A stretch of 63,549 nucleotides of DNA, counting the filler, from Octopus bimaculoides (Eukaryota), in the NCBI RefSeq assembly GCF_001194135.2. It is 9 parts of 8 records of this genome, joined end to end, with 100 filler letters (N's around TTAATTAATTAA, not from the genome) between each part and the next. Parts side by side here need not be neighbours in the genome. Positions count along the whole stretch, not along the records: positions 37,972 to 40,908 come from NW_026405976.1; 8 more parts are not named here. One strand, given 5' to 3'. The position numbers were made by a program, and so were the translations under genes. Below are positions 37,972 to 40,908 of the stretch, one piece after another. The stretch's first letter is position 1, and every line of letters starts with the position of its first letter. The notes beneath the pieces were generated by a model. It searched no databases and had not been told where the DNA came from. It worked only from the letters and a program-made list of their open reading frames with translations.

Positions 37972-40908
37972 CGAACGAAGGTACGTACGTTCTGTCCAAG
38001 TGCAACGAACGAAGTTCCGTAGCTCTTAGTTCGAACGAACGTACGTACGTTAGGTCCAAGGGCAACGAACGAATTTCCGTAGTTCATGGCTCGAACGAAT
38101 GTATGTACGTTCGGGCCAATTGCAACGAACGAAGTTCCGTAGCTCTTCGCTCGAACGAACGTACGTACTTTCGGTCCAAGAGCAACGAACGAAGTTCCGT
38201 AGCTCTAGGCTCGAACGAATGTACGTACGTTCGGGCCAACCGCAACGAACGACGTTCCGTAGCTCTTGGCTCGACCGAACGTACGTACGTTCGGGCCAAG
38301 AGCAACGAACGAAATTCCGTACCTCTTGGCTCGGACGAACGTACGTACGTTCGGGCGAAGAGCAACGAACGAAATTCCGCAGCTCTTGGCTCGGACGAAA
38401 GTACTTACGTTCGGGCGAAGAGCAAAGAACGAAGTTCCGTAGTTCTTGGCTCGAACGAACGTACGTACGTTCGGGCAAAGAGAAACGAACGAAGTTCCGT
38501 AGCTCTTGGCTCGAACTTACGTACGTGCGTTCGGGCCAATTGCAAAAAACAAGGTTCCGTAGCTCTTGTCTCGAACGAACGTACGTACGTTCGGTTTCAG
38601 AGCAACGAACGAAGTTCCGTAGCTGTTGGCTCGAACGAACGAACGTAATTTCGTGTCAAGACCAAAACACGATGTTCCGTAGCGCTTGGCTCGAACGAAC
38701 GTACGTACGTTCGGGCCAAGTGCAGCGAACGAAGTTCCGTATCTCTTGGCTCGAATGAAGGTACGTACGTTCGGGCCAAGAGCAACGAACGACGTTCCGT
38801 AGCTCTTGGCTCGAACGTACGTACGTACGTTCGGGCGAAGTGCAACGAACGAAGTTCCGTAGCTCTGGGCTCGAACGAACGTACGTACGTTCGGGCCAAG
38901 TGCAACGAACGAAGTTCCGTAGCACTAGGCTCGAACGAATGTACGTACGTTCAGGCCAATTGCAACGAACGAAATTCTGTAGCTCTTGTCTCGAACGAAC
39001 GCAAGTACGTTCGGGTCAAGTGCAGCGAACGAAGTTCCGTAGCTCTGGGATCGAATGAAGGTACTTACGTTCGGGCCAAGACCAATGAACGAGGTTCCGT
39101 AGCACTTGGCTCGAACGAATGTACGTTCGTTCGGGCCAAGTGCGGAGAACGAAGTTCCGTATCTCTTGGCTCGAATGAAGGTACGTACGTTCGGGCCAAG
39201 AGAAATGAACGATGTTCCGTAGCTCTTGGCTCGAATGAACGTACGTACGTTCGGACCACGTGCAACGAACAAAGTTCCGTAGCTCTTGACTCGAACGAAC
39301 GTACTTACGTTCGGGCCAAGTGCAACGAACGAAGTTCCGTAGTTCTTGGCTCGAACGAACGCACGTACGTTAAGGCCAATTGCAACGAACGAAATTCCGT
39401 AGCTCTTGTCGCGAACGAACGTACGTAAGTTCGGGTCAAGTGCAGCTAACGAAGTTTCGTAGTTCTTCGCTCGAATCAAGGTACGTACGTTCGGGCCAAG
39501 ACTAATGAACGAGGTTCCGTAGCTCTTGGTTCGAACAAACAAACGTACCTTCGGGCCAAGTGCAGTGAACGAAGTTCCGTATCTCTTGGCTCGAACGAAC
39601 GTACGTACGTTCGGCCCAAGTGCAACGAACGAAGTTCCGTATCACTAGGCTCCAACGAACGTACGTACGTTCGGACCAATTGCAACAAACGACGTTCCGT
39701 AGCTCTTGACTCGAACGAACGTACGTACGTTCGGTTTAAGAGCAACGAACGAAGTTCCTTAGCTGTTGGCTCGAACGAATGTACGTACGTTCGGGCCAAC
39801 CGCAACGAACGAAGTTCCGTAGCTCTTGGCTCGGACGAACGTACTTACGTTCGGGCGAAGAGCAACGAACGAAGTTCCGTAGTTCTTGGCTCGAACGAAC
39901 GTACGTACGTTCGGGCGAAAAGAAACGAACGAAGTTCCGTAGCTCTAGGCTGGAACGAACGCACGTACGTTCGGTCCAAGTGCAACGCACAATGTTCAGT
40001 AGCTCTTGGCTGGAACGAACGNNNNNNNNNNNNNNNNNNNNNNNNNNNNNNNNNNNNNNNNNNNNNNNNNNNNNNNNNNNNNNNNNNNNNNNNNNNNNNN
40101 NNNNNNNNNNNNNNNNNNNNNNNNNNNNNNNNNNNNNNNNNNNNNNNNNNNNNNNNNNNNNNNNNNNNNNNNNNNNNNNNNACCAATTGCAACAAACGAC
40201 GTTCCGTAGCTCTTGACTCGAACGAACGTACGTACGTTCGGTTTAAGAGCAACGAACGAAGTTCCTTAGCTGTTGGCTCGAACGAATGTACGTACGTTCG
40301 GGCCAACCGCAACGAACGAAGTTCCGTAGCTCTTGGCTCGGACGAACGTACTTACGTTCGGGCGAAGAGCAACGAACGAAGTTCCGTAGTTCTTGGCTCG
40401 AACGAACGTACGTACGTTCGGGCGAAAAGAAACGAACGAAGTTCCGTAGCTCTAGGCTGGAACGAACGCACGTACGTTCGGTCCAAGTGCAACGCACAAT
40501 GTTCAGTAGCTCTTGGCTGGAACGAACGTACGTACTTTCAGTCCAAGGGCAACCACCGAAGTTCCGAAGCTCTTGGCTCGAACGAACATACGTACGTTCG
40601 GGTCAAGAGCAACGAACGAATTTCCGTAGCTCTTGGCTTGAAGGAACGTACGTAAGTTCGGACCAAGTGCAACGAACGAAGTTCCGTAGCCCTAGGCTCG
40701 ATCGAACGTACGTACGTTCAGGCCAAGAGCAACGAACTAAGTTCCGTAACCCCTCGCTCGAACGAAAATACGTACGTTCGGGCCAAGAGCAATGAACGAA
40801 GTTCCGTTGCTCTAGGTTCGATCGAACGTACGTACGTTCAGGCCAAGAGCAACAAACGAGGTTCCGTAGCTCTTGTCTCGAACGAACGTACGTACGTTCG
40901 GTTTCAGA
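37972..40908. repeat. 60-bp CpG-rich tandem satellite, at least 45 units, gap-bounded
   Basis: Consensus CGAACGAACGTACGTACGTTCGGGCCAAGAGCAACGAACGAAGTTCCGTAGCTCTTGGCT recurs in register with the 60-nt lines. Confidence 0.95.

What the first reader, a model, noticed from the sequence alone, without database searches (positions are those of the whole stretch)
37972..40908. 60-bp satellite in which every unit is two hairpins
Seen: each unit is an 18-bp palindrome (CGAACGTACGTACGTTCG) plus a hairpin GCCAAGAGC...GCTCTTGGC around an 18-nt partly pairable loop. CpG density is very high for this AT-rich window. A few units show paired changes (AGTGC/GCACT at ~38899-38924; AGTG/CACT near 39620), others are unpaired. 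Diagnostic variant units recur, suggesting higher-order structure. Inference: a structure-forming satellite (cruciform DNA or processed repetitive RNA), possibly centromeric or subtelomeric. It is not CRISPR, since there are no unique spacers.
Basis: partly seen in the sequence, partly recalled or inferred. Interest (0 to 1): 0.7.

Follow-up and report, generated by a model that had tools for sequence, protein, structure and literature searches.

The report
60-bp self-complementary satellite DNA array
This is an ordinary non-coding tandem satellite whose 60-base unit is almost its own reverse complement, so it looks like two hairpins per unit, but its mutations ignore the pairing and nothing indicates a structured RNA or a selected hairpin.

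Summary
The 60-bp tandem array is real. It has about 40.5 non-redundant units with no indels, 84% identity between units, 52% GC and CpG observed/expected of about 2.

The assembly gap is probably spurious. The 347 bases before it (39675-40021) are exactly identical to the 347 after it (40182-40528), while the next-longest exact repeat is 56 b. The finding therefore counts about 5.8 units twice.

"Two hairpins per unit" holds only for the consensus. A perfect 18-bp palindrome occurs in 10 of 40 units, perfect 9/9 arms in 1 of 40, and both in none. The consensus is self-complementary about one circular axis at 46 of 60 positions (best of 2000 shuffles: 38). A tandem array of such a unit must have two dyad centres per period.

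Substitutions do not respect pairing. Paired cells are 83.1% against 84.0% in shuffles. The two "paired changes" are near-copies of one unit. The stem arms are the most variable part of the unit.

Coding, Rfam, tRNA, CENP-B-box and CRISPR readings all fail. A weak 7-unit (420-bp) higher-order period exists in 38512-39711. No relatives were found, but no eukaryotic genome collection was available.

Verdict: an ordinary dyad-symmetric satellite, of low interest.

The parts
37972..40021 (.). Left part of the 60-bp satellite array: 34 full units in register from 37972, plus the first 10 bases of unit 35. It runs to the left edge of the piece.
   Evidence: TRF period 60, 34.2 copies, 84% matches, 0% indels. 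Gapless alignment A1.
40022..40181 (.). Assembly gap of 160 N. It is most likely spurious, marking unmerged overlapping contig ends, and its length is out of register with the repeat.
   Evidence: The flanks overlap exactly by 347 b. The left side ends at unit position 10 and the right side starts at unit position 24, so an in-register gap would be 13 + 60k bases, not 160.
40182..40528 (.). Exact duplicate (0 mismatches in 347) of 39675-40021. This is redundant sequence counted twice in the finding.
   Evidence: The next-longest exact repeat in the array is only 56 b, and mean unit-to-unit identity is 83.7%.
40529..40908 (.). Unique continuation of the array: about 6.3 units, with units in register at 40519 + 60k. 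It runs to the right edge of the piece. Its last 50 b repeat 38552-38601 exactly.
   Evidence: TRF period 60, 11.9 copies..
38512..39711 (.). Zone with a weak 7-unit (420-bp) higher-order period, units 9-28. Diagnostic variants T29, C31, G34, T51 and T58 recur at lag 7.
   Evidence: Shared minor variants at lag 7: 0 of 5000 permutations reach the observed value. Lag-7 identity is 87.5% against about 82% at neighbouring lags.
38276..38293 (.). Example of the perfect 18-bp palindrome CGAACGTACGTACGTTCG (unit positions 5-22). This is dyad centre 1.
   Evidence: Read directly from the sequence. It is perfect in 10 of 40 units. As a DNA hairpin on the consensus it gives -7.0 kcal/mol.
38775..38783 (.). 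Arm A, GCCAAGAGC (unit positions 24-32), in unit 38752, the only unit whose two arms are perfectly complementary.
38784..38801 (.). The 18-nt 'loop' (unit positions 33-50), itself a small hairpin (ACGAAC / GAA triloop / GTT-C-CGT). This is dyad centre 2 and the best-conserved part of the unit.
   Evidence: Fold of the consensus. It has 2.8 variants per position against 5.0-5.9 in the arms.
38802..38810 (.). Arm A', GCTCTTGGC (unit positions 51-59). It can pair back to arm A of its own unit, or forward across the palindrome to arm A of the next unit.
   Evidence: The two registers are equally stable, -20.5 and -20.4 kcal/mol per 60 nt. The Rfam miRNA-like hits span the forward pairing.

Best explanation
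This is a non-coding tandem satellite, of the kind found in eukaryotic nuclear genomes. Its founding 60-bp unit was almost exactly its own reverse complement, in effect an inverted dimer of about 30 bp.

Any sequence that is both periodic and reverse-complement symmetric must have two dyad centres per period, half a period apart. Here they lie near unit positions 11.5 and 41.5. They are one property, not two separate devices.

Shown here:
- The symmetry belongs to the consensus.
- Individual copies are losing it through substitutions that are biased from GC to AT and are indifferent to pairing.
- Units are gained, lost and copied in whole 60-bp steps. There are no indels, there is a diverged 7-unit higher-order block, and there are scattered near-identical unit pairs.

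Inferred:
- The array is propagated by unequal exchange, slippage or conversion.
- The dyad symmetry persists because homogenisation keeps re-spreading consensus-like units, not because each stem is selected.
- The DNA could extrude cruciforms or form fold-back hairpins when single-stranded, which may itself promote whole-unit slippage. No selected structural or RNA function is indicated.
For: - Array anatomy.
- One circular symmetry axis (i + j = 23 mod 60) matches 46 of 60 consensus positions. The null best-axis mean is 26.7 and the maximum is 38 in 2000 shuffles.
- The intra-unit and cross-unit hairpin registers are equally stable.
- A 240-nt stretch folds as one long fold-back rather than as two hairpins per unit.
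- No covariation in any register.
- The arms are the most variable part, with stratified permutation p = 0.026. Non-complementary positions are better conserved than complementary ones, at 2.2 against 3.8 variants per position.
- Substitutions: 117 GC-to-AT against 38 AT-to-GC, and 0 indels against 224 substitutions.
- Higher-order period at lag 7, and near-identical unit pairs at 56-59 of 60.
- Coding is rejected. Five of six frames are open in the consensus. Stops and synonymous/non-synonymous counts match random expectation. There is no 3-base periodicity, p = 0.83. All Pfam hits are below their cut-offs.
- No true protein homologues.
- No tRNA and no Rfam family at its gathering score.
- Absent from viral, prokaryotic, plasmid, phage and metagenome collections.
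Against: - The source organism and the chromosomal position are unknown, so 'eukaryotic nuclear satellite' is an inference. It rests on the anatomy, the scaffold gap and the absence from non-eukaryotic collections.
- A dyad density about twice the shuffle level, together with CpG observed/expected of about 2 kept despite roughly 16% unit divergence, could reflect constraint at the level of the whole array. A per-pair covariation test cannot see that.
- Forty related copies from one, probably short-read, assembly give limited power. The order of units may be partly an assembly product.
Confidence: 0.72

Rival explanations
1. This is a functional non-B-DNA satellite, for example a centromeric one. 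Selection acts on the overall density of dyad symmetries in the array (cruciforms recognised by centromere-loading factors, as in the Kasinathan and Henikoff model) rather than on each base pair.
For: - Dyad density z = 8.5 against dinucleotide shuffles.
- Fold z = -10.8 as DNA.
- No CENP-B box, which fits the model's dyad-rich class (PMC5889037).
- Monomers with whole-unit dyad symmetry occur in putative (peri)centromeric satellites of Tribolium (PMC13081366).
Against: - The stem arms are the fastest-changing part of the unit, and pairing decays exactly as independent substitution predicts.
- Only 10 of 40 units keep the palindrome intact.
- No positional, ChIP or cross-species evidence is available.
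- The high dyad density is fully explained by inheritance from one symmetric founder unit.
Confidence: 0.14
2. This is an array of palindromic binding sites for a dimeric DNA-binding protein. The conserved boxes ACGTACGTT (positions 12-20) and GTTCCGTA (43-50) would be the constrained parts, and the dyad symmetry would reflect two-fold symmetric protein contacts.
For: - The best-conserved stretches are 12-21 and 37-50, not the long arms.
- Nine columns are invariant, all of them within 8-20 or 39-45.
- An ACGT core lies at the exact dyad centre.
Against: - A/T positions are generally less mutable here (2.9 variants per position against 4-5 at C/G). That alone explains much of the pattern.
- No binding protein or motif match has been tested.
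- The conservation contrast is modest (p = 0.026).
Confidence: 0.08
3. The array is transcribed into a repetitive RNA that folds into hairpins and is processed, for example into small-RNA precursors.
For: - Very stable predicted RNA folds on both strands, z = -13.4 and -9.5.
- Weak miRNA-precursor-like Rfam hits, the best being mir-278 at 29.1 bits, E = 0.0003.
Against: - All Rfam hits are far below the gathering scores of 55-99 bits.
- No compensatory changes.
- Both strands fold about equally well, as expected for any reverse-complement-symmetric DNA. The fold therefore carries no strand information and is not evidence of an RNA.
Confidence: 0.04
4. The piece is a protein-coding gene for a 20-residue tandem-repeat protein, since 60 = 20 codons and there are ORFs of up to 219 aa.
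For: ORFs of 142-219 aa on both strands.
Against: - Five of six frames are open in the consensus simply because it lacks stop triplets.
- Observed stops and synonymous changes match random expectation in every frame.
- No codon periodicity.
- Pfam hits are all below their cut-offs.
- A large protein search found nothing. The representative search found only unrelated proteins with their own repeats of other periods.
Confidence: 0.01

Closest known systems
Satellites whose monomer is itself a large dyad symmetry: Tribolium madens TmSat2 (704 bp with a ~600-bp palindrome-like core), the T. brevicornis 1061-bp satellite (~470-bp inverted segments), and the Trichogramma brassicae 385-bp satellite (80-bp inverted repeats). 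All as summarised in PMC13081366.
   Same: - The inverted segments cover most of the monomer. Here 46 of 60 positions lie on one axis.
- As reported for TmSat2, a fold spanning the whole monomer competes with, or beats, small local hairpins.
- The arrays run head to tail and have higher-order organisation.
   Different: - The unit is 6 to 18 times shorter (60 bp). It is CpG-rich and 52% GC.
- No sequence similarity could be tested.
- No array-level inversions ('macro-dyads') are seen within the 2.4 kb available.
- Genomic location is unknown.
Dyad-symmetry-enriched centromeric satellites (Kasinathan and Henikoff 2018, PMC5889037)
   Same: - Short dyads (arms of 5 or more, spacer of 20 or less) are enriched about two-fold over permuted sequence.
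- Stable non-B folds are predicted.
- There is no CENP-B box.
   Different: - That class is defined by centromeric location and CENP-A association, and neither can be tested here.
- Their dyads are under 10 bp and scattered, whereas here one symmetry axis organises the whole unit.
- Here the stems decay without constraint.
Higher-order-repeat satellites such as primate alpha satellite
   Same: Diagnostic variant monomers recur with a fixed multi-monomer period, here 7 units (420 bp).
   Different: Higher-order copies are only about 87.5% identical, against about 82% background. In regular higher-order repeats the figures are above 95% against 60-80%. The period holds only in the middle of the array.
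CRISPR arrays
   Same: Regularly spaced short palindromic elements.
   Different: - There are no unique spacers. All 60 bases of every period are homologous, with 84% identity between units.
- There are no cas genes and no leader sequence to inspect.
- No match in prokaryotic collections.

Membership tests
Satellite DNA (long non-coding tandem array) | Head-to-tail repetition of a unit over kilobases | tested here: met
   TRF period 60, 34.2 + 11.9 copies, 0% indels. There are 40.5 non-redundant units.
Satellite DNA (long non-coding tandem array) | Non-coding | tested here: met
   No frame shows coding constraint. Pfam hits are below their cut-offs. No homologues.
Satellite DNA (long non-coding tandem array) | High copy number and chromosomal clustering in a eukaryotic genome | not testable with these tools
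   There are no flanks, no reads, and no eukaryotic genome collection. The array reaches both edges of the piece.
Dyad-enriched (non-B-form) centromeric satellites, Kasinathan and Henikoff 2018 | Dyad symmetries enriched over permuted sequence | tested here: met
   Dyad density 3.62 against 1.75 +/- 0.22, z = 8.5. Consensus axis test 46 of 60 against a maximum of 38.
Dyad-enriched (non-B-form) centromeric satellites, Kasinathan and Henikoff 2018 | Predicted folding more stable than composition-matched sequence | tested here: met
   DNA fold -82.9 kcal/mol against -44.4 +/- 3.6 for shuffles, z = -10.8. Unit-level folds.
Dyad-enriched (non-B-form) centromeric satellites, Kasinathan and Henikoff 2018 | Centromeric location and CENP-A/CenH3 occupancy | not testable with these tools
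   The organism and its chromosomal context are unknown.
CENP-B-box satellites | Core CENP-B box TTCGNNNNANNCGGG | tested here: not met
   0 matches on either strand.
Structured RNA family or miRNA-type hairpin precursor | Match to a curated covariance model at its gathering score | tested here: not met
   The best hit is mir-278 at 29.1 bits against a gathering score of 55. All 11 hits are sub-threshold.
Structured RNA family or miRNA-type hairpin precursor | Base pairs maintained by compensatory substitutions | tested here: not met
- Full minimum-energy structure: 2 against 5.6.
- Cross-unit hairpin: 9 cells, which the slid controls (9-15) equal or exceed.
CRISPR array | Conserved repeats separated by unique spacers | tested here: not met
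   Every column of the 60-bp period is homologous across units, with mean column identity 91%. There is no spacer segment.
Regular higher-order-repeat satellite | Multi-monomer blocks much more similar to each other than neighbouring monomers are | tested here: inconclusive
   The lag-7 signal is significant for shared variants (0 of 5000 permutations). The identity gain is small (87.5% against about 82%) and local. A whole-array identity test gives p = 0.18.
Whole-monomer dyad-symmetric satellites (TmSat2 and similar) | Inverted segments spanning most of the monomer | tested here: met
   23 of 30 position pairs are complementary on one axis. The 42-nt cross-unit hairpin gives -18.0 kcal/mol.
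Whole-monomer dyad-symmetric satellites (TmSat2 and similar) | Sequence homology to a described member | not testable with these tools
   No satellite or eukaryotic sequence library was available. Searches for sequence strings in the literature found none.

The most novel reading that the evidence does not exclude
This would be a short, CpG-rich satellite whose entire unit is built on a single two-fold axis because the array is read as non-B DNA or as symmetric protein-binding sites, for example in centromere specification. Constraint would act on array-level dyad density and on the conserved ACGTACGTT and GTTCCGTA boxes rather than on individual stem pairs.
Probability: 0.1. Interest if true: 0.5.

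Novelty: new member of a known kind. Interest (0 to 1): 0.22.

Why it matters
As it stands, this matters little. It is one more tandem satellite with internal dyad symmetry, a class already discussed for centromeres.

There are two useful points. First, 'two hairpins per unit' in a tandem repeat is a geometric consequence of a single reverse-complement symmetry, so it should not be counted as two independent structural signals. Second, the scaffold gap here hides an exact 347-b overlap, so copy counts from this assembly are inflated.

If the array turned out to be centromeric in its host, it would be a compact example of whole-monomer dyad symmetry. PMC13081366 calls that arrangement uncommon.

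Tried and rejected
- **Structured RNA:** The Rfam E-value search gave only sub-threshold miRNA-like hits. Three pair-count tests showed no covariation.
- **Coding repeat protein:** Rejected from the ORF list, the frame-by-frame stop, synonymous and periodicity tests and Pfam. A word-indexed protein search found nothing. A full HMMER search of representatives returned only unrelated repeat proteins, such as a THAP protein and an AIF-like protein, with their own different periods.
- **tRNA-derived repeat:** ARAGORN found none.
- **CENP-B box:** None.
- **Viral, prokaryotic, plasmid or phage origin:** Three viral scans, two prokaryotic genome scans, blastn against plasmids and phages, and one metagenome scan were run. 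The metagenome scan gave two hits (L001, L002), both single chance 20-mers inside coding DNA with no tandem repeats.
- **Tracing the source by exact ORF look-up:** Four ORFs tried, none on record.
- **Literature search for 14- to 18-mers of the unit on both strands:** Nothing apart from one chance primer match in a human-cell paper.
- **Methylation-driven CpG decay:** CpG positions are no more variable than other C/G positions, at 3.9 against 5.0 variants per position.
- **Regular higher-order repeat across the whole array:** Not supported (p = 0.18). Only a local 7-unit period is supported.
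Full report
**The gap, tested first.** The piece is 2937 positions, including 160 N at 40022-40181. The 347 bases that end at the gap (39675-40021) are identical, without a single mismatch, to the 347 bases that begin after it (40182-40528). Elsewhere in the array the longest exact repeat is 56 b, and units are on average 83.7% identical. The identity stops exactly at both contig ends, which is the signature of two overlapping contig ends that a scaffolder joined with N instead of merging. 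The N run also breaks the repeat register. The left side ends at unit position 10 and the right side starts at unit position 24, so an in-register gap would be 13 + 60k bases, not 160. I therefore treat the non-redundant sequence as 2430 b, or 40.5 units. A true recent duplication of at least 5.8 units cannot be excluded without long reads. In either case the unit counts in the finding are inflated. The array reaches both edges of the piece, so there are no flanks.

**The observation.** Tandem Repeats Finder reports period 60 with 34.2 and 11.9 copies, 83-84% matches and 0% indels. A gapless alignment of the 40 non-redundant units (A1) gives this consensus: CGAACGAACGTACGTACGTTCGGGCCAAG[A/T]GCAACGAACGAAGTTCCGTAGCTCTTGGCT. 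Units differ from the consensus at 9.3% of positions. It also contains the 9-bp arms at 24-32 and 51-59, around 18 nt that form a small hairpin of their own. GC content is 52% and CpG observed/expected is 1.9-2.0. "Every unit", however, is an overstatement. The palindrome is perfect in 10 of 40 units, the arms are perfectly complementary in 1 of 40 and at least 8/9 in 7 of 40, and no unit has both perfect.

**One symmetry, not two hairpins.** I compared the consensus with its own reverse complement at all circular offsets. One axis (i + j = 23 mod 60) makes 46 of 60 positions complementary. In 2000 shuffles the best axis averaged 26.7 and never exceeded 38. A sequence that is both periodic and reverse-complement symmetric must have two dyad centres half a period apart. 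As a result, arm 51-59 can pair backwards with its own unit's 24-32, or forwards across the palindrome with the next unit's 24-32. The two registers are equally stable, at -20.5 and -20.4 kcal/mol per 60 nt as DNA. A real 240-nt stretch does not fold as eight small hairpins but as one long fold-back. The z-scores are -10.8 (DNA), -13.4 (RNA, plus strand) and -9.5 (RNA, minus strand). Both strands fold well, as they must for symmetric DNA, so the fold says nothing about an RNA. Dyad density, as defined by Kasinathan and Henikoff, is 3.62 against 1.75 +/- 0.22 in dinucleotide shuffles.

**Do substitutions respect the pairing?** They do not.
Only 2 cells show a change on both sides, against 5.4 expected.
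- The full minimum-energy structure gives the same result.
- The cross-unit hairpin has 9 such cells against 4.7 expected (15 of 500 shuffles reach that). The slid-partner controls give 9-15, and the tool's own documentation warns that such shuffle counts arise in related sequences without any structure.
The third A53 unit is unpaired, and Fisher p = 0.58.
- The 9-bp arms are the most variable part of the unit, at 5.0 variants per position without position 30, against 2.8 in the "loop" (stratified permutation p = 0.026).
- Positions that are not complementary on the axis are better conserved (2.2 variants per position) than those that are (3.8).

The dyad symmetry is therefore a property of the founder or consensus unit, and it is decaying as independent substitution predicts.

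**Other readings.**
- *Coding.* The period is 60 = 20 codons, and ORFs reach 219 aa. However, five of six frames are open in the consensus merely because it lacks stop triplets. Stops and synonymous changes occur at random expectation in each frame, and there is no codon periodicity (p = 0.83 without position 30). Pfam hits are all below their cut-offs. One large protein search found nothing. The full HMMER search returned only unrelated proteins with repeats of other periods.
- *Known RNA.* Only sub-threshold miRNA-like hairpin hits, and no tRNA.
- *CENP-B box.* None.
- *CRISPR.* There is no spacer segment.

**Array dynamics.**
- There are 224 substitutions and 0 indels, so unit length is strictly kept.
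- Substitutions are biased from GC to AT, 117 against 38. CpG positions are no more mutable than other C/G positions. Together with CpG observed/expected of about 2, this argues (as an inference) against germ-line CpG methylation of the array.
- Diagnostic variants recur at lag 7 in units 9-28 (38512-39711): T29 at units 2, 9, 16 and 23; C31 at 11, 18 and 25; T51 at 12, 19 and 26; T58 at 9, 16 and 23. None of 5000 permutations reaches the observed lag-7 sharing. Lag-7 identity there is 87.5% against about 82% at other lags.
A whole-array identity test is not significant (p = 0.18).
- Units 4-8 resemble units 30-32 (up to 59/60), and lag 12 is mildly enriched.
- These patterns fit whole-unit unequal exchange or conversion. 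Unit order in a probably short-read assembly should still be trusted with care.

**Origin.** No relative was found in IMG/VR viral contigs (three patterns), GTDB genomes (two patterns), metagenome contigs (two chance 20-mers in coding DNA), phage or plasmid records, exact-ORF look-ups, or full-text searches for sequence strings. None of these collections holds eukaryotic nuclear genomes. The result therefore excludes viruses, prokaryotes and plasmids, but it does not show that the satellite is undescribed in its host.

**Comparison with what is known.** Short dyad symmetries enriched in centromeric satellites, and their proposed role in centromere specification, are described in PMC5889037. 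The sequence-level criteria of that class are met here (enrichment over permuted sequence, stable predicted folds, no CENP-B box). The defining location and CENP-A criteria cannot be tested. Monomers that are themselves large dyad symmetries are known but "not so common" according to PMC13081366, which cites T. madens TmSat2, T. brevicornis and Trichogramma brassicae. The present unit is a much shorter, CpG-rich example of the same design.

**Verdict.** I rate this a new member of a known kind. The best explanation is a neutrally decaying satellite derived from a reverse-complement-symmetric founder unit (confidence 0.72). The main rival is array-level selection for non-B DNA or for symmetric protein-binding sites, with a combined probability of about 0.2. 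Interest is low.

Noticed in passing
window 39675-40021 and 40182-40528: The two flanks of the N gap are an exact 347-b duplicate of each other, so the gap is probably an unmerged contig overlap. The 160-N length is also out of register with the 60-bp repeat.
   Followed up: yes
window 40859-40908 and 38552-38601: The last 50 bases of the piece exactly repeat an internal stretch, including the rare GGTTTCAGA variant. This could be a duplication at a distance of 30 units, or a second unresolved assembly overlap or loop.
   Followed up: partly
window 37972-40908, all units: There are no indels in 40 units against 224 substitutions, so unit length is held at exactly 60 bp. This is unusual for neutrally diverging DNA at about 16% pairwise divergence.
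   Followed up: partly
unit position 30, e.g. window 38001 + 60k: This position is split evenly, A in 18 units and T in 18. T-type units cluster in the middle of the array (13 of 17 in units 12-28, against 5 of 23 elsewhere). T30 breaks the stem pair with T53.
   Followed up: partly
unit positions 12-21 and 37-50: The best-conserved stretches are ACGTACGTTC and AACGAAGTTCCGTA, not the 9-bp arms. All nine invariant columns fall within 8-20 or 39-45. These could be protein-binding boxes, or could simply reflect the lower mutability of A/T positions.
   Followed up: partly
window 37972-40908: Substitutions run 117 GC-to-AT against 38 AT-to-GC, yet CpG positions are no more variable than other C/G positions and CpG observed/expected stays near 2. 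This suggests the array is not CpG-methylated in the germ line.
   Followed up: partly
unit positions 1-20 and 33-43: The unit has 4-bp sub-periodicity, (CGAA)n and (TACG)n, with a self-match of 28 of 60 at shift 4. The motif AACGAACG occurs twice per unit, 30 bp apart. The unit may have grown from a tetranucleotide repeat.
   Followed up: no
L001 246-265 and L002 848-867: The only metagenome matches to a 20-mer of the unit lie in ordinary coding sequence with no tandem repeats. They are chance matches, not relatives.
   Followed up: yes
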